Positions 47,572-60,235 of a stretch of DNA of 64,000 bases are shown here, in pieces. The notes under the pieces were generated by a model. That model worked only from the letters and a program-made list of their open reading frames with translations. It was not told the DNA's origin and did not search any database. Origin of the DNA: Podarcis melisellensis (Eukaryota). Where the stretch lies: the NCBI GenBank assembly GCA_964234715.1, contig OZ174280.1, one strand, 5' to 3'. Both the position numbers and the translations under genes were made by a program. Numbering within the stretch: the first letter of the stretch is position 1; the number at the start of each line of letters is the position of its first letter.

Positions 47572-48511
47572 TATCAATGAAAGATCTGGGCAGCTAATAT
47601 AGCTGACAAGTGGATACCTTTCATTGCATATTGGAATAGTAACTGTGGTCATATCATATTGTATAGCAGTTTTGTGTGTGATAACAATGAAGATAGATAC
47701 CTTGATGGATAGATTTAGAAATGTGCTCACACACAAATCTCTCAGTGGTTTTATACATTGCATGGCCATATTAATAACATTTATTTTTTGACTAGTGTCT
47801 CTGAAATAGAACATCTGAGCTTGTGGTATTTTTTTTATCAGATTAAACTAAGAAATTGCAATGTCAATTAAAAATAATAATTCACAGTTCTGTGAAGTAG
47901 ACTGCTGCTATCCCCCTTTGACCCCAGCCCCCTCAGTGGCTCCATGGCAGAAGTGGAAATTCAAGCCGACAAGAATCAGGTTCTATTCTTTATCAACTGG
48001 ATCTCAGCATTCGCTCAAACAGCTGGAGAGCGTTTCTGAGGCAGCCCAGAGATCTAAAGAATGTGATCGCAATTCACAAAAAGCTGAGCTGCCTATACCT
48101 GATTCACGTTCTAAGCCGAGACCCCCTCTCCCTGTTAGCATTAACTGTTCGGCAGAGTGCTGAGGAGCCCGAGGCAATTCTCTCTATTTGGTGTGCAGAA
48201 GATGAGCATTGTTATTCATTTCTGGTATTAGACAGCCAAAGCTGTGCAAGAATATTCAAAAGCCAAATTAGTACTCATCCCTGACTCTTGTTTGTGAAGT
48301 CAGAGGCAGACCTAAGGGCAGACTCTGCTGAGCCTGGAGGCAAAATTGTTTAAATTAGTATTACAAGCATGGGAAGGTCGAGCAGTGCATAATTAGAAGG
48401 GACCTCAAGCTGCACATTTTACTTATGAACTCCCTAAACTTCTTAGTCTTGGAATGTGTATAGGGATACATAATTTCTGGTTGTCGCTGAAATATTTCAC
48501 TTGGAATTTAG

Positions 48512-48513
48512 CT

Positions 48514-48560
<47 letters not shown>
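48512..48560 (+). repeat. (TTTC)n microsatellite
   Basis: Read directly from the sequence. Confidence 0.95.
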
Positions 48561-48561
<1 letters not shown>

Positions 48562-49358
48562 TGCGTGGACAGGCAGAGTCCCCAGATCCCGAGCGGCCCC
48601 CCCCCCGTCATGTGGAATAACGACTCAAGACAACGTGCTATGGGATTAAATTGGCCACAACTTTATTATATTTCAGATGTGGGTAGACCTTGGATCAGGC
48701 ATTGGGCATTATCCCTCCCCAGTCCCCAGCCGGGGGACCTATGGAACATCAGGGTTATCCGGGGGGGGGATGGGCCGGTTCTGGAGAACATATGTTCAAG
48801 CAGAGATAGCCACCCCCATTACGCCGCCGCCGCAGGGGAGAGCAATGATGACCTCTCGGCATACGGTCAAAGCTTCCCTTCAGAAACCCCTTTAACGGGG
48901 AACCCTGGTATTGCCGCTGCAAAGAGGAAGATAGACTAAAGGATTCCGCCCAAGGCCTGATACCGCCAAAGTTGTGACGTTTTGCTACTGGAAAGGCAAA
49001 ACCTGCCAATGCAGGGGAATTCCTTTCCGGCCCTTTAACAGCGACCTTGACATAGCAGCGCCCGCATACCTGTGAAGAAAAGTTAACCTGCAAAATAAGA
49101 CTTAACTAAGGGTGGGTAGGGTGGGAGAAGCTCTGGAGCCAACTGAGGATTCCCAGGTAAGATCCTCCCTCTATTGTGTGGGCAGGAAGTCCCTCCCCTA
49201 CCTGGCCTGCTCTCCTTGGCAACGCTTCCCCCAGGTGGGATTGGACAACTGACTGAGGTAGGCAGAGACCTCCAGGTATCCCACCTGAGGGAAGGCAAAG
49301 CCAAGCCTGTGTTGATGGAGCCGCTCCAGATCCAGGGGCTGCGTGTGTCCACGCAAAG
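48559..49358 (-). mobile_element. CpG-rich ~800-bp element with inverted termini; candidate DIRS/Ngaro-type solo repeat
   Basis: ctttgcgtggaca...tgtccacgcaaag termini (imperfect out to ~38 bp), no TSD, minus-strand AATAAAGTTGTGGCC. Homologous to 58744-59475. Confidence 0.6.
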
Positions 49359-49849
49359 GGTGCCCCCGTTTTATGCGGGGAGCGGTCATTCTTCCCCATT
49401 CAAGGATGGGGTTTAAACAACAAGGTGAGGCGTTGCCTCCAGTAGCAGTTGATGGGGCATGAAGCTGCTTACCTGACTTCCCTTCGGGGCAGCGAGGTCA
49501 GCACAGTGCAAATGTATTGGCAGGAAAATCCAATTGACTCCGGCAGGTATGTTTGCATTGCGCCAACTCTACCTTCACCTCATTCCTCTCCCTCCTAGTG
49601 TGTCACAACTATGGTAGTGACAAGAAGTCGCTGCCCCAACTGATACTGGTTGCCTCCATGTCCTGCCATCTTGTAGGCATCTTGTGGGCCTCTGTTTACA
49701 AGAGCATGCTGAATTAGACGACTTCTTTGATCCAGCAGGGCATTTCTCATATTCTCATGTTCTCATGATGGGAGGAAAGTAGGAAACATAAAGGATCCCA
49801 GTGCAATGCAAAGCATGTCTATGGAGAAATGAGCTTTATGTAATTCAGT

Positions 49850-50463
49850 GCGGCTGAGATTTTACTTTCTTGGGCTCCATGATCACTGCAGATGGTGACA
49901 GCAGCCACAAAATTAAAAAGACGCCTGCTTCTTGGGAGAAAAGCAATGACAAACCTAGACAGCATCTTAAAAAGTAGAGACATCACCTTGCCAACAAAGG
50001 TCCGTATAGTAAAAGCTATGGTTTTCCCAGTAGTGATGTATGGAAGTGAAAGCTGGACCATAAAGAAGGCTGATCGCTGAAGTATTGATGCTTTTGAATT
50101 ATGGGGCTGGAGGAGACTCTTGAGAGTCCCATGGACTGCAAGAAGATCAAACCTATCCATTCTTAAGAAAATCAGTCCTGAGTGCTCACTGAAAGGACAG
50201 ATCGTGAAGCTGAGGCTCCAATACTTTGGCCACCTCATGAGAAGAGAAGACTCCCTGGAAAAGACCCTGATGTTGGGAAAGATTGAGGGCACAAGGAGAA
50301 GGGGACGACAGAGGACGAGATGGTTGGATAGTGTTCTCGAAGCTACCAGCATGAGTTTGACCAAACTGCGGGAGGCAGTGGAAGTCAGGAGTGCCTGGCG
50401 TGCTCTGGTCCATGGGGTCACGAAGAGTCGGACATGACTAAACGACTAAACAACAACAACAAA
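49850..50463 (+). mobile_element. Bov-B (RTE) LINE 3' fragment (longest copy)
   Basis: Encodes KRRLLLGRKAMTNLDSILKSRDITLPTKVRIVKAMVFPVVMYGSESWTIKKADR...; (AAC)n tail. Confidence 0.95.
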
Positions 50464-51163
50464 TTTCCCATAGGAATATAGGAAGCTGACTTGTACCAAA
50501 TCAGATCATTGGTACATATAGCTCAGTATTGGTCCATATAGCTCAGACTGGAAGCATCTTTCAGTCAGGGGGCATCCCCAGCCTTACCTAGAGATACCAG
50601 GTATGAACCTGGGACCTTCGACATGCATGTAGATGCTCTATGATTAGCTTTGTCCCTTCTCTGGGCACATGTGTGCAGGATTGCAGTGTTTGAGGTCCAG
50701 CGATAGAGCTGAGTTGGTGTGATGTGGCCCATCTGAAAAGGTGCAATGAACACTCCTCATGTGCATACTTGGCTACTATCCTAACAGAAAGCAGAACTAG
50801 GTTAATACAAGTGTGAATCGTGATGGCTGCCTTAGATCTCATTTTCCAGAATCGCCTACTGTACTATTATAAAGCAATTATAAAGGAGGTGCCTTGAAGT
50901 CATCACAATATGAATTTCTTTATATAATTACATCATAGCAAAGTCACTCAGGTATGGCTTATTTTGAGCCTGAGCTGAAACATCCAAGTGGCAGCCTCCT
51001 CCTGGTTGTTAGCATGGACATGGACTCTTCTTAGTCAACTGCTTTTGGAAAAGATCCTTAAGGAGTGGTACCAGAGTACTGACACATCTATGATACCAAA
51101 CACTTCAATGTTTTATATTGTAAATCACCCTGCGATCCTTGGATGAATGGCAGTATAGAACAT

Positions 51164-51164
<1 letters not shown>

Positions 51165-51208
<44 letters not shown>
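51165..51208 (+). repeat. (GTT)n microsatellite, tail of a short LINE/SINE 3' end starting ~51105
   Basis: Read directly. The upstream caccctgcgatc...gatgaa motif recurs at ~53760. Confidence 0.85.
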
Positions 51209-52247
51209 ATCAAACCTCCAATTTTACTGAGATTTATAATAGTTTTTAAATAGTTCAGAGCCAGTCCTTACTTTACCTATGGGGCAGTGGTGTGATGATG
51301 GGGGGAGCAATGGGTCCCATGTTGTCACATGCCTAAAGAAACGATCAAACTGTCAGTGTGTATTAAATTTAACACACAAACCCTCCAAAGAGGATATGTC
51401 TGAACTTACGAGTTACATGAAGTTCTGAAAGGTGCCACATCTAGGAAGCCTGCCAAAAGTTGTCAGACAAGTGACAGTGGCATTGTTCAGGATGTTCAAG
51501 ATTCTTTTCATATCATGACAAACAGATGACAATGTCATGTCACTGCTGTTAATGTGTAGTGCCTGCCAAGTGTGTTCTTAAAAGATAAAACTGGTGGGAA
51601 TAAGTTCTGGAGACCACAAGAGAATATACAACCAATCTGTAATGCTGTCGTGCATGTTTTGCAAGATGACAGTGGTTTCCCATGATGGTTCTGAATATGA
51701 ACCATTGAAATGGCAACTCACAAATAAGATTTGATGCAACAGACTCAGGGAAGCAATTTATGTACCTGGTAATATTTACTTTTGCTCTCTCTCCAATACA
51801 TCAGTGTAGGCTGGGCAATGGAATTTGTTGCAGTGTTTTGTCACTTGATCACAGCTTCCCTTCAGTGAGAAAGACTTTCCAAACAATGTTAGTTCCACAG
51901 TGCACACACACATTCTGAACCTGTGCATGGGCTGAACATGTTTTAAAACAGGGGTGGCCATCCTTTCTACTCTTGGATGGAGGAGTCTGGGAGTGTATTT
52001 TGAAGTCCAAACTGACCTTCTCATAGGTGGTCAGACTTCAGAATAATGTTGCCACCATGTAACAGCAAAAGTCTCACAATGATGAAGCATGTATGTTTGG
52101 ATCCTACCTACCAAACTCGAAGGATGATGCAACACTGAAGAATAGAATCTCATTTTTAGTGCTGTGCAAAAAATAATCCCCTACATTTCATGACCACTAT
52201 CCATCAGATAATGAGACAAAGAATTGCATTTGAAAATGATCAAAGGG

Positions 52248-52249
<2 letters not shown>

Positions 52250-52292
<43 letters not shown>
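52250..52292 (+). repeat. (GT)21 microsatellite
   Basis: Read directly from the sequence. Confidence 0.95.
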
Positions 52293-52293
<1 letters not shown>

Positions 52294-54347
52294 TCAAAGG
52301 GTGTCCTTTCATTCTACAAATAATTTTCCAGCAGTCTAACTTTTGTCAGTGGCCAGGCTTCCTCAAAAGCACATGATGTCCTCAGCTGAGCTTTCCTGTA
52401 AACATGGGAAGGTAGAGAGGCTGCCTGCTTAGTGCCTGATAGTTCATTATTATTATTTTAAAGTGAAGTATTTTTACTACTAAAATATATGGGGTTTATT
52501 GTTTGTTTTTAAAAAAACTGACAGGAAGAACTTCCTTTAAAAGTAAAATCGGTGTACCAAAGTGAGACACTCAGTAGCCAGCGTCCCTGGAATCCCACAC
52601 TTCATTTAAAGTTCAGACATCACAAAGTAACTCACTCCATGGGCCTTTTTTAGATTAGGATGCAATGGCACCTGGGGAGGCTGCAATGCACTGAAAAATG
52701 TTTAATAGAAAGCAAAATTTGCACCACCACTACCCTTTGTCTATGGCAGTGATAAGGTCAGTTCAACCCTGCCTCCACTGAAATTCTAATGGAATTGTAC
52801 AGTGCCCAAGAATGAGGCAGAAAAATGGTAACCTCTTTTGCAGGAGAAGAAAATATTATTAGAAATTAGATGACAGGTTTTGACATAGGACTGATCTCTC
52901 TTATATACAGTATTTTGAAAATCAATTTATTTTCCTTATAAGCAGAACTGTGGGCAAATTGCCACATCTTGTTTAAAAATTGGAAAGACCAGATCAACTT
53001 ACTTAAGAGCTCCAAAGGGAATTGGTGAGTTGATTGCATAGTCACATTGAACAATTTTAGCTCATCATTTTATAAAGTTTTTATTCTGCTGGTTTCACCT
53101 AGTGTCTGCAATATATTAGAATGCTGGTTTTAATTGTTTAATGCAAGTTGATTGCTGTGAGCTTCACTGTTCTCCCTTTGGAAAATAAAATTTGAAATAA
53201 TAAATCAATAAAAATTGACTTCCATTTCTCTTTCCAATAAAATACCTAACTTCTCCTGAAAATAAGATTCTGGTTGTTTAGCTACAGAAGATTATTATCT
53301 TCTACTCAGGAAATATTATCTTGACCACCTGGATTCCAGAAAATTCAGCACAATTCACCGTGGACTTTAGGAACCCAGTTTTGTCTAATCCAAGGATGGC
53401 TCTCCAGGTATTGTTGGACATCAGCTAAAATTATCAGTCCCAACAAGCATGGCCAGCTAATGGGGGAGAAACACTTTTGATATATTGCAGGAATAAGCAG
53501 ATGTTTTATACAAAATCTTGATTTTAGGCATCTGATATATACAGGCATGTGTCACTGAAAGAACAAAAATCCAGAGGAGGCTGATTTTCACTCATTCAAA
53601 GGAAGATATTTCTGCTGTGTTCAAAACTGTGTGTTATCTAACCAACCATGATTCTCAATTTTGCAGAAATGAGAATGTCCAAACATTATTCTGGTGCAGT
53701 TTCTTGAAATATTTGTTATATAGGGATGGACAAATCTTGTATGTAATTTACTGTTTTGAACCACCCTGCGATCGTCAGATGAAGGGTGGTATACAAATTT
53801 AATAAATAATTATAATAATTTAAGATTGAGACTTTGGTTTGAAATCTAGATCTTATTACAAAAACATATTTACTTACCTAATAACAGTGTCTCCCCTCCC
53901 CACCCCACAATGGCCAGTTCACTAAAACACAAACTTTTAAATTCAAATGTTAAATCTCTTAATTAAAAATTGGATTTTTTTTTTTTAATGAACAGAGAAA
54001 TCCTATAATCCAATTATGCCGGGAAGGAAGATATGTCACTGTTACGCTCATTCAATCATACATTTATGAGATTTATTTTTAAGATTTCTTACTCACTCTT
54101 CATCATAAGGTGCCAGGGCCAGCTACAACAATAGAATATAAAATTATATTAAAAACCATTACAATGATCAAACTCATAAAACTGTTTCAAATGGAGCAGA
54201 ACAGTATCTATTTACCAAAAGTGGTGAGACCCACAAAACAAAATACCTTCTATAGTCCCTTGCTCCATGAGCTGTCATCTGTGTTATGGTCTTCCTTTTC
54301 ATATACTGGTGGTGGTGTGCTTTGATTAGGTGTTCAGTAACAATATA

Positions 54348-54649
54348 GTGATGTATGGAAGTGAGAGCAGGACCATAAAGAAGGCTGATCGCTGAAGAAT
54401 TTATGCTTTTGAATTATGGTGCTATAGGAGACTCTTGAGAGTCCCATGGACTGCAAGAAGATCAAACCTATCCATTCTGAAGGAAATCAGCCCTGAGTGC
54501 TCACTGGAAGGACAGATCCTGAAGCTGAGGCTCCAGTACTTTGGCCACCTCATGAGAAGAGAAGAGGCAGCAGAAGACAGGAGTGCCTGTCATGCTCTGG
54601 TCCATGGGGTCATGAAGAGTTGGACATGACTAAATGACTAAACAACAAC
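54348..54649 (+). mobile_element. Bov-B 3' fragment with a ~120-bp internal deletion
   Basis: Reads ...HLMRREE|AAEDRS, skipping DSLEKTL...KLRE. TSD aacaatata. Confidence 0.92.
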
Positions 54650-54888
54650 AACAATATAACCTATGCTTTGACATGGCAATATGGGAGGGGCAATTGCCAA
54701 TATGGGAATGGCTATTTATTTTAATTTCTCCCCCCCAACCATTGAAGTAAATCATAGAGGAATTATTTGTTCCAGGTCTGGTGTAAATTTGTACCATCAC
54801 TGGGCACTGAGAGTGGAAGAGATATGGGATGTAACCTAAGTGTGGTCTTTCTTTGTGCTGCCCCTATGCTGCCTACAACTCCATGGCC

Positions 54889-55196
54889 TATAGAGTCATA
54901 GAGTTGGAAGGGATTCCCAAGGAGCATCTAGTTCAAAACCTTGTGATGCAAAAATTTCAGCTAGATCATACATCACAGATGATCTTCCAACCTCTGCTTA
55001 AAATCCTCCAAGGAAGGAGAGTCCACCACCTCTCGTGGGAGCCTGTTCCACTGTCAAACAGCTCTTACTGTCAGAAAGTTATTCCCGATGTTTAGTTGGA
55101 ATCTCCTTCCTTGAAGCCATTGGATCTGATCCTACCCTCTGGAGCAGGAGAAAACAAATTTGCTCCATCTTCCACGTGACGACCCTTTAGCTGTTC
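54889..55196 (-). mobile_element. CR1 LINE 3' fragment
   Basis: Reverse complement of the CR1 end (tatagagtcatagagttggaaggga...ctcttactgtcagaaag). Confidence 0.88.
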
Positions 55197-57529
55197 CCCT
55201 GGCATATCTTCAGTGGTGGAGCAGGTCTACTGGTGGAGTATTCTGCTATCCTATCTATCGTGGTGGAGACATGTCTCACATTCTACTGCTGCAGTGGGCC
55301 TTTCACTAAATCCACCAGCATAACCCCCAAGTATAGCATTGTGCCATGAGATTTCGACATGTAAATATTTACTTGGCATAAATGTATACTAAAGTTACTT
55401 AGTCTCCTTATATGATGGAATGCTCCTTTCCTCTTCACACACGTCCTTGACCCTCAAAATCTGCTGTGGGGTTTTCCCCAATCCTTCAGAGCATATTTGG
55501 GGAGCCAGAAGTACAAGAGGTAAGGAGAAGGATGGGAAGTTCTATTGTATAAGTCAAAGTCATTCCACTCATGCAACGATTTCATTAAATTCAACCCTGA
55601 AATCTGTTTCCCTTTCTAGTAAGAAAAGGTTTAGTGCTCTCCTACAGGCCAGTGCTAAGCAATATACTGCACTACTTAACCTCTGCATGTTAAGACATAT
55701 TTAGGCATTTCAGTATGTCCAAGATTCTCCATATTAGATTAATAAAGATGGGATGTGCCTTGCTACACTTTTATTTGTTAGTGTGCTTGCAATTACTCCT
55801 GGTTCTCCAAGGACATGGCCTGATAGATGATGTTGCAGGGAAACAAAATACAAGTTTTGTTATTCTCAGCACCTTTTTGCATCTTAATGAGCCTGAGAAG
55901 AGAAAGGAGGGTGGGGGAGGGAGAGGCAGGGAAGAAAAGAGACAAAGTGAGAAGGTTAAGCTGAAACCAGAGTGCTCCAGGTTTGCCTCTAGGCCGCTCA
56001 TCAGGAACCTAAGCCCATAACAATTATATTGTTTGTTACTGAAATAATGAAAGGGAGTAATTAGAGTGATGCTGTTAAAATTACCTGCTCTTTGTAATAT
56101 ATGCTTCCTAAATTAGTTTGGCAAGTGTGCTTTGTAATAGTCCGTATGAAACAAAAAACAAAAAATGTATAGAACAACACAAACTAAAGTGTGGCAATTA
56201 GGCATCCAAGCCACCATGTTGACAGCTTTTTAGAGGTGCTTTCATTTTTAATTTTAAAATAGCCAGGTCCCACTGAGAACAATATCTGTGCACTGTGGTT
56301 TTGTTGAATAGGATGGTGTGCTGTTAGCAATTAATTATAAAAAAACCTACATAAAACTTTGCTCCACTTGCAGGGATTCAATAGTCATAACTGTCACCTT
56401 TAAGTGTAGCCCTTTCTGTAATTAACCAAGGCGTCAGCTGAATAATTGTCATAGATCAACCAAAAGCTTGAATTCCTCCTATAGTGTTGGTTGTGCTCCC
56501 TTTAAAATGTGGTACAAAAAGTTCCACTGCAAGAACAGAGGAAAGGGCCGTGGGTCAGTGACAGAGCATGTAATTCATATGCAAAAGGTCCTGGGTTCAA
56601 TCCTCAGGATCTCCAAAGAACCCTGATGAGTCACTGCAAGTCAAAACCAAGGGTAGAGAATCCCTGGTCTTTCAGATACCTGCTCCTATGAGCACCACCC
56701 AGCATGGCCGATGTTGAGTGTTGATGAGAGTTCTGGCCCAACATCGTATGCAGGATGTCCATTTCCTCATTGGTGATGTAGACAATTCCATCTTCATATT
56801 CAGTGAAATTGCAAAGTCTTGCTGACTTCACCCACCCTGCATAAGGAGCTCTTCAAACTTGCCCTAGGAAGTGGTGAATGACTATTCAAAACAGGGATGT
56901 CATGAATGTCACTCAGTGGTGGTCTGTGAGGAGGAACCATGGCGCCCCAACACTGGCACCACTGCAGCTGAGGTGAGGGCTTCATGGGTGCACCAGATCA
57001 GGAGCAGCTGCTTACCTCCACCAGTTTCCTCACAAAGCCCCATTCTCATCATCTCCTTGTACTGCAGCACACCATTCCAGGTAAGCTGCATTGCTGGAAA
57101 AGCATCTCTGTGGTTCCACCCCAACTCTGCAGGCTGCTGCTGATCTGACTGAAACACTTTCAGTATTTCTCAGCTATTTTGCCCAAGTAGAGGCCTCCAA
57201 ATGAACAATGACTTTCAATTCCCTTGCAACCGAGGCAATGTGATAGTCTTATTGAAACTCTAGTTTCCCTGACAATTATTCAGCAGAATCCTCTAAAATT
57301 CAGCAGGAACCTCTTTTTTTTAAAAAAAAAAAAAGATGGAAGGCAGAGACAACTATAGCCCTGAACACTGCTGAGTCTGGCTCAGTGCTTGCTGTCCACT
57401 GACCAGTTTGGGATATTTGAAGTGCAGTCAAACCAACAATTTGTATTTTGCTAGATAGGTGCATGAGAGGAGCTGAAGCTCACAGAGCTTTTCTGTAAAC
57501 TTGCTGGAGAGAACTCTGTGAGAGATATT

Positions 57530-58047
57530 CATAGCTGTCAACAGATTTGAAAATAAGAGACGAGCAGCCTCGAAAATAAGGGATCAGTAACCAAAATAAG
57601 GGATTTTCCGGCCACAGGTATGTTCAACTTCTGAGCCCCTCCGAGCCAAAGGCAGAAAGCCCAGCCAGCAGCCAAACCAAGCCTTAAGCGGTGGTTGCCA
57701 TAGCACAGCAACCCAGCAAAGGGGATGCAGCAAGGAAAACCACCGTCACCTCTCCGCTGGGAAGCGCTGAGCAAAGGTGAGTCCCCAGGCAATGCGGCCG
57801 ATTTGATCAGCACAAGGCATGCAAGCTCCACCCCCCAGTCGTTCTTAGACTCCTTATTGGGTGAGCAACGCAGCCAAGCAATACAGTTGGAGCCTCCCTC
57901 CTCCCTGGCCAGCAGGCAGGGAGGGAGAGGAGCTGCTTCCTTTGAAACCCGGGAAATTTAAGGGACATCATCAATAAGGGACAGCAGCGGGACACAGCGC
58001 TGGGATAAGGGTGTTTTCTGCCAAATAAGGGATGGTTGACAGCTATG
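57530..58047. mobile_element. 518-bp non-autonomous hAT element
   Basis: Perfect 13-bp TIR catagctgtcaac, 8-bp TSD gagatatt/gagatact, repeated subterminal AATAAGGGA motifs. Confidence 0.9.
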
Positions 58048-58743
58048 GAGATACTCCCACTGTGCCCCAAAACAGGGCACATATATAGAGGCATAGCTAT
58101 ATATTTTTCCACCTGCCTGGGCACTCCCTCTTTCTCTTTCCATCTCTTTCCACCCTGTCAGCAATGTAAGAACACATGCTAAGTCTTAGCTCCATGTTCA
58201 GACTACATTTTAAGCTTGACTTACATATGTCTTTGTAACTGAATTACTATTTTAAGCCTGCCTGAGCAAAGCAGTTGCATCTGTTGCTCTTCAACAAGTA
58301 TCCTTTTACAAGACTGTTTGTGTGACTGTTAGTTTAATGGGTAGAAAAGAGAGAAATACCAGAAAAATCCAGTCTGCCTTAAAACATCCTGGGTTACTTA
58401 AGCTTAAAGGCTAAAACTACCCTATCTAAGCTTCCTTTCAAGCTGCAAAGGGATAGCGTTCTGCTGAAGTCATAAGTGCGAGAAAGGAAGGATAATAGCT
58501 TATAAATATATCCTCTCACAGCTTCTATTCACATCCCAAAAGCTAGCACCTCAGGGTTAGGCATAGCAAAGAGTAATGGGGGGACTGTTCCCTTTCCAGG
58601 CAGCTCAACTGTAGGCAAAATCCTGTCACCACCAAAGTAAATGATGGTGGTATTAAACAAAATATTTGTGCTATTGTGAGGAATAATGCTAGTTCATTGG
58701 GTTTCTGCCCTCCTCCTCTTCACCTTGCACCATCCTCATATCT

Positions 58744-59475
58744 GTTGCGTGGCAAGTCCCCTCCCCCATGAGAAATGAAGACACTGGACACATTATTTAA
58801 GGTTAATGGGCATAAAAAGGTCACAACTTTATTGATTACAGAATTGAAAGGTATTGGCCTTAGGCATTGGCTCCTATCGACTACCCGGCATGGAGACCGG
58901 GAAGGGTTGTCCACAAGCCGTGGAAGTCCTGTTGAAGTACGCCAACTAGGATCCCATGGGTGTCACCGCTCGGGGGCGTGCCGGGGGCCCTTACCTCCCT
59001 AGGTTTCGGACAAGGCAACGCCCCCCGGAGTCCTCTACCGGACTACCCTTTCCATTGGGGAAGGTGATGGCGCTTCCTTCCCCCCATTCATTTGCATAAC
59101 AGTTAACCCCTGCCAATGCCTAACCGCCAATACCGTGGAAGTTGTGATGTTTGCTACAAGGCAGGCGAAAAAACCAAAAGGCACGAAGTGTGCCAAATTG
59201 GAAAAATTCCTACCAGGCCCCTTGCGGCAACCAACCGAAGTCCATAGCAAGGTCATAGCTAGCTAATCCTAAAGGGTGGGTGGGATGGGAAAACCACTCA
59301 GCTGGGAAGGGGAAAGAGGGCGGTCTCCGGGCGTGCCTGGCCTCAAATGGGCTAGGCCCTGCCTCCCCAGCCCGCCAATTGGCGGACGGGGTGGAAGGCA
59401 CGCCCGGGGATTCCCTGTTCACGCGGGGGCAAGGTCCCGCCCCCGCGTATGTGGGAGGAGGGTTTTGCCCGCAAC
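58744..59475 (-). mobile_element. CpG-rich ~730-bp element with inverted termini; diverged relative of 48559-49358
   Basis: gttgcgtggcaagtcccctcccc / gggaggagggttttgcccgcaac termini. Shares cacaactttatt, ggcattgg, aagttgtga, tttgctac and aagggtgggt motifs in the same order. Confidence 0.6.
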
Positions 59476-60235
59476 CCCCTCTCCTCCCAGGGCGGAAAAG
59501 GCTCTCTGATGGCTTGTGGGAAACCCCAGAAGAGATTCAGGGGGCACAAAGACAGAGGAAAGAGAGTGAATGTTCTATTGTGCAAGGAGAAATCCTTCCG
59601 CTGATGGAACACTCTCCTTAGCAGTACATAAAACACAACCCAATATGTGCACAAAACTCAATGTTGCCAAGACTTTCTCCTTGACCAACATTGTATTTAC
59701 TTGTTTATTTTGGCAACCGTGCTGCCATTTCAAGGGCAGACAGTGGAAAGAAGGGCTGCTGTATTCTATTCTTAGCTCTGCCTTCTGCTGGCTACGTGAC
59801 CTTGGGCAAGTCACTTAGCATACTTCTAACTGATGTTTACCCATTTATAGGCATTACTTACCACCCTCTTCTGTTTAACCTTTAATCCATGCCTTAAATC
59901 AATAGTTTCAAAACATTAGGCTCTTAATTCAGATCGCTCTTATTTTCCTTTGTAAGCTAAAGCATTGTGTGATTTGTTTTCTTTATGTCGCAAAGCCTTG
60001 GAAACCATTGTGTTGCTGAACAGCTTTGCCGGTACTGTAAAAAAGGAAGGAAGGAAAGGAGGCCAGACTCTGTGGAAATCAATGTGGCCCTCCTACGCCC
60101 CACTTAAAATGGGGACAGAGGATAATCAAGGAATATTGCTTCTACTGCATCATCACTGCTGCCACCCAGGTAACTAAGGAGCAAGGCAAGGAGGGATTGC
60201 TTGCTGGATGGCAGGGATGAACCCCTACTATGAAC

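What the first reader, a model, noticed from the sequence alone, without database searches (positions are those of the whole stretch)
58744..59475. Conserved nested long-range fold shared by two otherwise diverged elements
Seen in both elements, in the same order. Outer stem: cacaacttt/aaagttgtg (48656-48664 with 48968-48976) and tcacaactt/aagttgtga (58821-58829 with 59139-59147), overlapping the minus-strand AATAAA. Inner stem: atcaggcattgggc/gcccaaggcctgat (48694-48707 with 48948-48961, 13/14) and ggtattggccttaggcattggc/gccaatgcctaaccgccaatacc (58850-58871 with 59112-59134). The enclosed loop is 240 nt in both although its sequence cannot be aligned by eye. The termini also differ between elements yet stay complementary within each. 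Inference: compensatory change points to selection on an RNA or ssDNA structure, for example gating of the poly(A) signal, packaging, or circularisation during replication. I do not know a description of this fold, so it is the best candidate for an undescribed system here.
Basis: partly seen in the sequence, partly recalled or inferred. Interest (0 to 1): 0.72.

Follow-up and report, generated by a model that had tools for sequence, protein, structure and literature searches.

The report
Inverted repeat bracketing LTR-like poly(A) signal
Two diverged copies of a lizard LTR-like repeat keep the same interrupted inverted repeat around a roughly 300-base variable stretch, ending in the poly(A) signal; it probably pairs in the transcript, but two copies cannot prove this, and similar structures are known in retroviral LTRs.

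Summary

- **The elements.** E1 (48559-49358) and E2 (58744-59475) are discrete, non-coding, GC-rich units read on the minus strand. They have TTGCG...CGCAA inverted ends, no target-site duplication, unrelated flanks, and an AATAAA followed by a conserved GT-rich block.
- **Conservation.** They are 55% identical overall. Three of the five best-conserved islands are stem arms.
- **Predicted pairing.** Within the whole-element RNA the stems have pair probabilities of 0.79-1.0 in both copies, apart from E1's one mismatched position.

The case for a selected fold is thin:
- There are only two copies. I count two or three compatible changes against about as many disruptive ones.
- Neither strand is favoured.
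- The 240-nt loops fold no better than shuffled sequence.
- E2's inner arms carry four CCAAT boxes.

The repeat is not a DIRS internal complementary region, and nothing in Rfam matches it.

My best reading, at confidence about 0.4, is an RNA helix controlling 3'-end formation. That would be a relative of the HTLV Rex-responsive element and the HIV-1 poly(A) hairpin.

The scan holds similar unverified notes on other DNA of this genome (s1-511051, s1-508257).

The parts
58744..59475 (-). E2: LTR-like, non-coding unit with GTTGCG...CGCAAC ends and no target-site duplication
   Evidence: Flanks are not homologous to E1's flanks. GC 0.57 and CpG o/e 0.59, against 0.13-0.18 in the flanks.
48559..49358 (-). 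E1: diverged relative of E2 with CTTTGCG...CGCAAAG ends and no target-site duplication
   Evidence: 42-nt terminal inverted repeat at 76%. 55% identity to E2 over aligned columns.
59139..59147 (-). E2 outer stem, 5' arm (UCACAACUU)
   Evidence: Pair probability 0.79-1.0.
58821..58829 (-). E2 outer stem, 3' arm (AAGUUGUGA), starting inside AAUAAA
59112..59134 (-). E2 inner stem, 5' arm, carrying two ATTGG (reverse CCAAT) motifs
   Evidence: Pair probability 0.92-1.0.
58850..58871 (-). E2 inner stem, 3' arm, carrying two CCAAT motifs
58872..59111 (-). E2 enclosed 240-nt spacer; not conserved and no more stable than shuffles
   Evidence: z = -0.78 on the minus strand and -1.14 on the plus strand. 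Ungapped identity to the E1 loop is 24%.
48967..48978 (-). E1 outer stem, 5' arm (9 Watson-Crick bp, extendable to 12 with two G.U pairs)
48654..48665 (-). E1 outer stem, 3' arm, covering the last four bases of AAUAAA
48948..48961 (-). E1 inner stem, 5' arm
   Evidence: 13/14 paired.
48694..48707 (-). E1 inner stem, 3' arm, carrying one CCAAT motif
48708..48947 (-). E1 enclosed 240-nt spacer
   Evidence: z = +0.38 on the minus strand.
58828..58833 (-). E2 AATAAA hexamer
   Evidence: Lies in a conserved island with 17/21 identical columns.
48662..48667 (-). E1 AATAAA hexamer
58778..58792 (-). E2 GT-rich block about 40 nt downstream of AATAAA; candidate downstream element of the poly(A) site
   Evidence: Read; partly conserved with E1. 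Function is inferred.
48619..48634 (-). E1 GT-rich block downstream of AATAAA
   Evidence: Read and the alignment. Function is inferred.
59148..59157 (-). E2 conserved block GTAGCAAAC directly 5' of the outer stem, preceded by a U-rich tract
   Evidence: Island with 18/21 identical columns.
48979..48988 (-). E1 conserved block GTAGCAAAAC directly 5' of the outer stem

Best explanation
E1 and E2 are solitary copies of two diverged families of one LTR-like terminal-repeat unit, read on the minus strand. The order along that strand is a promoter/enhancer-like part, then AATAAA with a GT-rich block, then a 60-90-nt tail.

Both inherited an interrupted inverted repeat: an outer arm pair of 9-12 bp and an inner pair of 14-22 bp. 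It brackets about 305-309 nt of freely evolving sequence, and its 3' arm begins inside the poly(A) hexamer.

The most likely working form is RNA. In transcripts that read through the unit as a 3' untranslated region, the two arms would pair and loop out the variable stretch. This puts the 3' half of AAUAAA into a helix. It also brings the conserved GUAGCAAAC block, with its U-rich tract, next to the poly(A) signal. The pairing would therefore tune where and when the transcript is cleaved and polyadenylated.

- Shown: the repeat, its conservation, and its dominance in predicted folds.
- Inferred: that the unit is transcribed on the minus strand, that both arms are in the RNA, and that pairing (not each arm's own sequence) is what is selected.
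For: - The arms are 3 of the 5 most conserved islands, while the rest of the alignment is 55% identical with 23% gapped columns.
- The outer arms are perfectly complementary in both copies. They contain no CCAAT box, so that rival does not explain them.
- The stems appear in the minimum-energy fold of the domain. In the whole-unit RNA their pair probabilities are 0.79-1.0 in E2 and 0.88-1.0 in E1, except at E1's one mismatch.
- One clean compensatory pair (C-G/U-A), one further swap or paired indel, and one U.G/U-A change are present.
- The asymmetric internal loop (3-4 nt against 17-20 nt), which leaves the first half of AAUAAA unpaired, is the same in both copies.
- The spacer between conserved anchors is 305 versus 309 nt, although the loops are unalignable.
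- CpG o/e of 0.46-0.59, against 0.13-0.18 in the flanks, indicates that the copies are not heavily decayed. On that basis, most E1-E2 differences arose while the lineages were still active.
- There is precedent: the HTLV Rex-responsive element is a long stem-loop in the LTR that sets the geometry of the poly(A) signal (PMC6714889).
Against: - There are only two sequences, and disruptive changes roughly equal compatible ones. These are the E1 C x U mismatch, three frayed end columns, and a 7-nt indel that removes half of E2's extra helix in E1.
- Neither strand is favoured: z is -4.9 minus and -5.3 plus for E2, and -2.0 and -1.6 for E1.
- The loops are not structured (z = -0.8 and +0.4).
- Other GC-rich window pairs in each unit give duplex energies as good or better.
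- E2's inner arms coincide with four CCAAT boxes.
- The transcription start is unknown, so whether the 5' arm is in the RNA at the element's 5' end cannot be said.
- The parent element was not found, so it is unknown whether it is an LTR element or a tyrosine-recombinase element.
Confidence: 0.4

Rival explanations
1. The feature is a DNA-level promoter architecture. The arms are an inverted duplication of a CCAAT-box (NF-Y type) module that flanks the core regulatory region. Each arm is conserved because proteins bind it, and the complementarity is a by-product.
For: - By my own reading (not a computed count), E2 has about eight CCAAT/ATTGG motifs where I estimate about 1.4 by chance, four of them inside the inner arms. 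E1 has at least four.
- Neither strand is favoured, and the reported stems are all Watson-Crick.
- The loop is unstructured and unconserved, as expected for a spacer.
- E1's only mismatch destroys a CCAAT box as well as a pair.
Against: - The outer arms have no CCAAT box, yet they are the best-conserved and are perfectly complementary.
- In E2 the roughly 11 inner-arm positions outside the CCAAT pentamers are also complementary.
- The C-G/U-A change occurred in both arms at the same position.
- E1 keeps 13/14 pairing although it has lost three of the four boxes.
Confidence: 0.25
2. The repeat is an inherited relic. An old inverted duplication is kept in both lineages by chance or by weak constraint on each arm (for example, the 3' arm as part of the poly(A) site). 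It has no function as a pair.
For: - E1's stems alone are not significant, and a nested 9+7 arises in 7-9% of shuffles.
- Because the arms are conserved in sequence, E1's complementarity is mostly inherited rather than independent evidence.
- Disruptive changes are as frequent as compatible ones.
Against: - The two outer arms are 100% conserved while most of the unit has diverged beyond alignment.
- By my own estimate, two independent conserved islands would share nine complementary bases by chance with a probability of about 0.001.
- Changes fall on both sides of the same pairs more often than expected (my own estimate, p about 0.03-0.15).
Confidence: 0.18
3. Complementarity is renewed by the replication mechanism, as in DIRS-order elements. 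There, internal segments template the ends in each cycle, so arms stay matched without any selection on a fold.
For: - Neither copy has a target-site duplication, and the inverted ends are TTGCG...CGCAA.
- DIRS-order elements are abundant in lizards: 775 DIRS1-like copies in Anolis (PMC3266345).
- Unverified scan notes report Ngaro elements in this genome.
- All-Watson-Crick arms that differ between elements but match within each are what templated copying would give.
Against: - The arms are complementary to each other, not to the termini. No internal segment matches the ends.
- The terminal repeats are 26-42 nt, not 66-316 nt.
- The mismatch and bulges inside the stems argue against recent copying.
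- No known DIRS or Ngaro model includes such a pair.
Confidence: 0.1
4. The arms are sites for inversion of the enclosed segment, either by the element's recombinase or by homologous recombination. The spacer would then exist in two orientations.
For: - The E1 loop aligns slightly better to the reverse complement of the E2 loop than to the same orientation: p=0.004-0.1 inverted against 0.13-0.73 direct.
- The inverted score of 175 exceeds all 36 scores against real GC-rich control segments; the same orientation scores 137.
- Spacer length is conserved without sequence conservation.
Against: - Both alignments are heavily gapped and have nearly equal identity (0.74 and 0.73).
- K-mer and ungapped comparisons show no signal in either orientation.
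- The inverted alignment is offset by about 25 nt.
- Such a switch has no precedent in a retroelement.
Confidence: 0.04

Closest known systems
Rex-responsive element of HTLV-1 and other deltaretroviruses (LTR U3/R stem-loop)
   Same: Both are long stem-loops of a few hundred nucleotides inside a terminal repeat, closed by a long-range helix and sitting at the poly(A) signal. In HTLV the fold sets 3'-end formation by bringing the signal and the cleavage site together (PMC6714889).
   Different: Here AAUAAA lies in the 3' arm, already next to its presumed cleavage site, and is not separated from it by the fold. The enclosed sequence is neither conserved nor predicted to be structured. No Rex-like protein or parent element is known. 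There is no sequence or Rfam match.
HIV-1 poly(A) hairpin in R
   Same: The AAUAAA hexamer is partly base-paired, so helix stability can tune poly(A) site use.
   Different: The HIV structure is a local hairpin of about 47 nt. Here the partner strand lies about 305-309 nt upstream.
DIRS1-like termini and internal complementary region
   Same: Both insert without a target-site duplication and have inverted ends. In both, complementary segments within one element differ between elements.
   Different: The internal complementary region pairs with the element's termini and lies as two adjacent halves (PMC3266345). Here the arms pair with each other, and nothing internal matches the ends. The terminal repeats are also far shorter.
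SIRE, the short solitary A2-B2 unit of the tyrosine-recombinase retroelement VIPER
   Same: Both are short, non-coding, interspersed units that correspond to the terminal repeats of a larger retroelement without a DDE integrase (PMC6681497). This is a model for what E1 and E2 may be.
   Different: No parent element was found here, the host and sequence are unrelated, and no inverted repeat of this type is described for SIRE.
Solo LTRs of endogenous retroviruses and LTR retrotransposons
   Same: Shared features are TG...CA ends, short terminal inverted repeats, enhancer-like motifs, AATAAA with a GT-rich block near the 3' end, and a size of 730-800 bp.
   Different: Neither copy has a 4-6-bp target-site duplication, and the bases outside TG/CA (T...A) are shared by both copies.

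Membership tests
DIRS1-like retrotransposon (termini plus internal complementary region) | Two adjacent internal regions complementary to the start of the left terminus and the end of the right terminus | tested here: not met
   Self-comparison finds only the terminal inverted repeat and the nested arms. Nothing internal matches the ends. Definition taken from PMC3266345.
DIRS1-like retrotransposon (termini plus internal complementary region) | Inverted terminal repeats of 66-316 bp | tested here: not met
   The terminal repeat is 42 nt at 76% in E1 and about 26 nt in E2.
DIRS1-like retrotransposon (termini plus internal complementary region) | No target-site duplication | tested here: met
   No 3-6-bp direct repeat flanks either unit at any plausible boundary.
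DIRS1-like retrotransposon (termini plus internal complementary region) | gag, RT/RNase H/methyltransferase and tyrosine recombinase reading frames | tested here: not met
   The units are 730-800 bp with only short ORFs. None of the ten window ORFs scanned (140-212 aa) matches a retroelement family in Pfam.
Ngaro-like retrotransposon | Split direct repeats A1 ... B1-A2-B2 | tested here: not met
   There are no internal direct repeats in either unit. A solitary A-B remnant cannot be recognised without a full-length parent. The Xenopus repeat sizes are A 236 bp and B 152 bp (PMC9210276).
Ngaro-like retrotransposon | The unit matches the terminal repeats of an element encoding a tyrosine recombinase | not testable with these tools
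   No other part of this genome or of other squamate genomes could be fetched.
Solo LTR of an LTR retrotransposon or endogenous retrovirus | TG...CA ends with short inverted repeats | tested here: met
   TGCG...CGCA in both units.
Solo LTR of an LTR retrotransposon or endogenous retrovirus | Target-site duplication of 4-6 bp | tested here: not met
   E2 flanks are tctgt and acccc; E1 flanks are tcttt and aaggg.
Solo LTR of an LTR retrotransposon or endogenous retrovirus | U3-R-U5 signals: poly(A) signal followed by a GT-rich element near the 3' end | tested here: met
   AATAAA lies about 80-105 nt from the 3' end, followed by a GT-rich block, and is conserved in both units. This is a sequence match only; use is not shown.
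Retroviral response element of the Rex/Rev/Rec type | Conserved multi-branched structure that binds a viral export protein | tested here: not met
   The loop interiors are no more stable than shuffled sequence and are not conserved. Protein binding cannot be tested here.
Any Rfam family (ribozymes, response elements, other cis-elements) | Covariance-model match | tested here: not met
   A permissive scan of 48300-59700 gave no hit inside E1 or E2.

The most novel reading that the evidence does not exclude
The two arms form a functional long-range helix (in RNA or single-stranded cDNA) that is specific to a so-far undescribed family of terminal units. These units insert without a target-site duplication and may belong to a tyrosine-recombinase-type element. 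The spacer would be constrained in length (about 305-309 nt) but free in sequence. The helix would act as a switch for 3'-end formation or for closing the replication intermediate. In the boldest form, the arms also allow the spacer to flip.
Probability: 0.12. Interest if true: 0.6.

Novelty: new member of a known kind. Interest (0 to 1): 0.3.

Why it matters
If the pairing is selected, it is a further example of a retroelement using a long-range helix in its terminal repeat to control polyadenylation. It would be in a reptile element that seems to insert without a target-site duplication, and cis-acting RNA signals of such elements are barely studied. It would also give a simple structural marker for finding and classifying this repeat family in squamate genomes.

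If it is only a pair of inverted CCAAT-box modules, it is ordinary promoter architecture. Either way the claim currently rests on two sequences.

Tried and rejected
**Getting more family members.** This was the decisive data, and every route failed.
- Translating an ORF inside E1 and searching the protein collection, to pull out other copies, gave nothing. I did not repeat this for E2, because even the window's own ORF is not in that collection.
- Conserved-motif scans of viral, metagenome and prokaryote-genome contigs gave no hits or chance hits only. The two metagenome hits, L001 and L002, are bacterial coding sequence.
- The scan's own index holds no look-alike.
- The window holds no third copy.
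- None of the ten window ORFs scanned (140-212 aa) matches a retroelement family in Pfam, so I had no protein seed for fetching full-length elements.

**Reads.**
- The look-up of sequencing runs showed the locus in DNA runs of about eight related organisms, and a small share in possible RNA runs.
Expression, transcript ends and orthologous copies therefore could not be examined.
Local whole-window passes (ARAGORN and my own scripts) did run over them.

**Analyses that gave nothing useful.**
- Rfam gave no hit in the elements.
- Duplex-energy ranking of window pairs is dominated by G-run/C-run pairings and does not discriminate. Searches timed out.
- RNAalifold's 13 'compensatory' pairs, most of them inside the loop, come from fitting two GC-rich sequences and were disregarded.

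**Readings rejected.**
- E1 and E2 as the two LTRs of one 10-kb provirus: they are too diverged, and the interior is other repeats with no coding remnants.
- A MITE nested in an LTR: there is no target-site duplication around the arms.
- A Helitron: the ends do not fit.
- A hammerhead or HDV-type retrozyme: no ribozyme hit.
- A DIRS1-like deletion derivative: no long inverted terminal repeats and no internal complementary region.

Full report
**What is there**

The window holds two discrete GC-rich units, E1 (48559-49358) and E2 (58744-59475). Both read best on the minus strand.
- Each has inverted ends of the form TTGCG...CGCAA: 42 nt at 76% in E1 and about 26 nt in E2. This end motif occurs four times in the window, only at these ends, against 0.29 expected.
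- Neither unit has a target-site duplication at any plausible boundary.
- The flanks of the two units are unrelated on both sides, so the inverted ends mark the true limits.
- There is no coding capacity, no Rfam hit, and no third copy in the window.
- On the minus strand each unit carries motifs that resemble binding sites: many CCAAT boxes, CACCC and GC boxes, a GGAATT and a TTGGCA block. These are followed by AATAAA, a conserved CCCAT about 25 nt later, a GT-rich block, and a 60-90-nt tail ending in CGCA.
- This is the layout of a long terminal repeat. The missing target-site duplication in both copies is what one expects of an element that inserts by a tyrosine recombinase.
- CpG o/e is 0.46 and 0.59, against 0.13-0.18 in the flanks, so the copies are not heavily decayed.

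**The observation**

- MAFFT gives 55% identity over aligned columns, with 23% of columns gapped. Only five islands reach 10 of 12 identical columns: a CACCC block, the 5' outer arm with its GTAGCAAAC leader, the 3' inner arm, the AATAAA plus 3' outer arm, and the 3' terminus. Three of the five best-conserved islands are therefore stem arms.
- The minimum-energy folds of the domain recover the nested stems in both copies.
- In an RNA running from the unit's 5' end to just past AAUAAA, the stem pairs have probabilities of 0.79-1.0 in E2 and 0.88-1.0 in E1, apart from E1's one mismatch. All 30 pairs in E2, and 22 of 23 in E1, are in the minimum-energy structure.
- Measured between conserved anchors, the spacer is 305 versus 309 nt. 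The exact 240=240 match depends on where each inner stem happens to end.

**How strong is the case for a selected fold**

- Because the arms are conserved in sequence, complementarity in E1 is mostly inherited. Only the columns that differ between the copies are informative.
- Compatible changes: one C-G to U-A swap; one G-C to C-G swap (or paired 1-nt indel) at the loop end; one U.G to U-A change.
- Disruptive changes: a C x U mismatch in E1; three frayed columns at the ends of the outer stem; and a 7-nt indel that removes the 5' half of E2's extra 9-bp helix in E1 while the 3' half remains (and manual reading).
- With about 17% divergence per arm site, about 0.7 pairs should change on both sides. 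Two or three do, so by my own rough estimate p is about 0.03-0.15.
- E1's stems alone are not significant in shuffles. E2's 12-bp run has p=0.03.
- The excess folding stability of the domain is the same on both strands: E2 z = -4.9 and -5.3, E1 z = -2.0 and -1.6. It lies wholly in the closing repeat, because the 240-nt loops alone give z = -0.8 and +0.4.
- The loops are at random identity when compared ungapped: 24% in the same orientation and 27.5% inverted.
- Nothing therefore points to a structured RNA domain inside the loop, and nothing separates RNA from single-stranded or double-stranded DNA.

**What else could keep the arms**

- E2's inner arms carry four CCAAT/ATTGG motifs. By my own count from the sequence, the unit as a whole has about eight where I estimate about 1.4 by chance. 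An inverted pair of NF-Y-type modules is a real rival.
- It does not explain the outer arms, which have no such motif and are the best-conserved and perfectly complementary. It also does not explain the complementarity of the inner-arm positions outside the pentamers.
- Templated renewal, as in DIRS elements, fails the definition. The internal complementary region pairs with the termini (PMC3266345), and here nothing internal matches the ends.
- A weak lead: the E1 loop aligns slightly better to the reverse complement of the E2 loop than to the same orientation. Both alignments are heavily gapped and nearly equal in identity, and k-mer tests are flat. I leave it as an unresolved hint of inversion.

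**Most likely mechanism**

I take the arms to pair in the transcript that reads through the unit, with confidence about 0.4.
- The helix begins inside AAUAAA and leaves the first half of the hexamer in a conserved asymmetric internal loop.
- The helix would also place the conserved GUAGCAAAC block, with its upstream U-rich tract, next to the signal.
- This geometry could either mask the signal or supply an upstream enhancer of cleavage only when the upstream part of the repeat is present in the RNA.
- The logic is known from the HTLV Rex-responsive element, whose stem-loop in the LTR brings the poly(A) signal and site together (PMC6714889). It is also known from the HIV-1 poly(A) hairpin (my own knowledge).
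- The specific fold has no Rfam match and, as far as I could search, no description. The kind of device is not new.

**What the units are**

This is not settled.
- The ends, signals and size fit a solo LTR. The absence of a target-site duplication in both copies, and the shared T...A outside TG/CA, fit a tyrosine-recombinase element better.
- A solitary A-B unit of such an element has a precedent in SIRE/VIPER (PMC6681497).
- Lizards carry many DIRS-order elements (PMC3266345), and unverified scan notes report Ngaro elements and other 'GCAA-bounded' units without a target-site duplication in this genome.
- No full-length parent could be fetched.

**Limits**

I kept those letters out of all later database, pattern, paper and findings searches. 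Local whole-window passes (ARAGORN and my own scripts) did run over them.
- Transcription, transcript ends and orthologous copies therefore remain untested.

Noticed in passing
59478-59491 (minus strand: GGGAGGAGAGGGGG) and 49363-49372 (minus strand: AAAACGGGGG): Both units have a run of five G, inside a purine-rich tract, immediately 5' of their minus-strand start. It abuts the start in E2 and lies 4 nt away in E1. It looks like the polypurine tract that precedes a 3' LTR, or like a target preference. The flanks are otherwise unrelated.
   Followed up: partly
48514-48561: An (AAAG)n / (CTTT)n microsatellite of about 12 units abuts the minus-strand 3' end of E1. E2 has nothing similar.
   Followed up: no
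59421-59448: A perfect 10-bp GC-rich hairpin (ACGCGGGGGC, an 8-nt loop, GCCCCCGCGT) lies about 25 nt from the minus-strand 5' end of E2. It is not conserved in E1. Another scan note mentions a '5' hairpin' in GCAA-bounded elements of this genome.
   Followed up: no
59372-59385: A 14-nt palindrome, CCGCCAATTGGCGG (two back-to-back CCAAT boxes), in the upstream part of E2. It sits inside a longer imperfect palindrome.
   Followed up: no
58872-59111 versus 48708-48947: The two 240-nt loops align slightly better in inverted than in direct orientation: p=0.004-0.1 against 0.13-0.73, and the inverted score exceeds all 36 scores against real control segments. The alignments are heavily gapped and inconclusive.
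   Followed up: partly
58989-58997 (minus strand): A consensus-like splice donor, GAG|GTAAGG, lies inside the E2 loop. The aligned E1 sequence, GAG|GTCATC, is weaker.
   Followed up: no
50031-50462 and 54346-54654: Two copies, 91-94% identical, of another interspersed repeat ending in ...GACTAAACGACTAAACAACAACAA. From memory it resembles the tail of BovB-related SINEs of squamates and ruminants.
   Followed up: no
No conclusion is drawn. I kept it out of all later database, pattern, paper and findings searches.
   Followed up: no
window:58300-59900 in public runs: The locus is held by DNA runs of about eight related organisms, with 0.41-0.73 of sampled words. Possible RNA runs of two further organisms hold 6-7% of the words. 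Which part they hold could not be checked.
   Followed up: no
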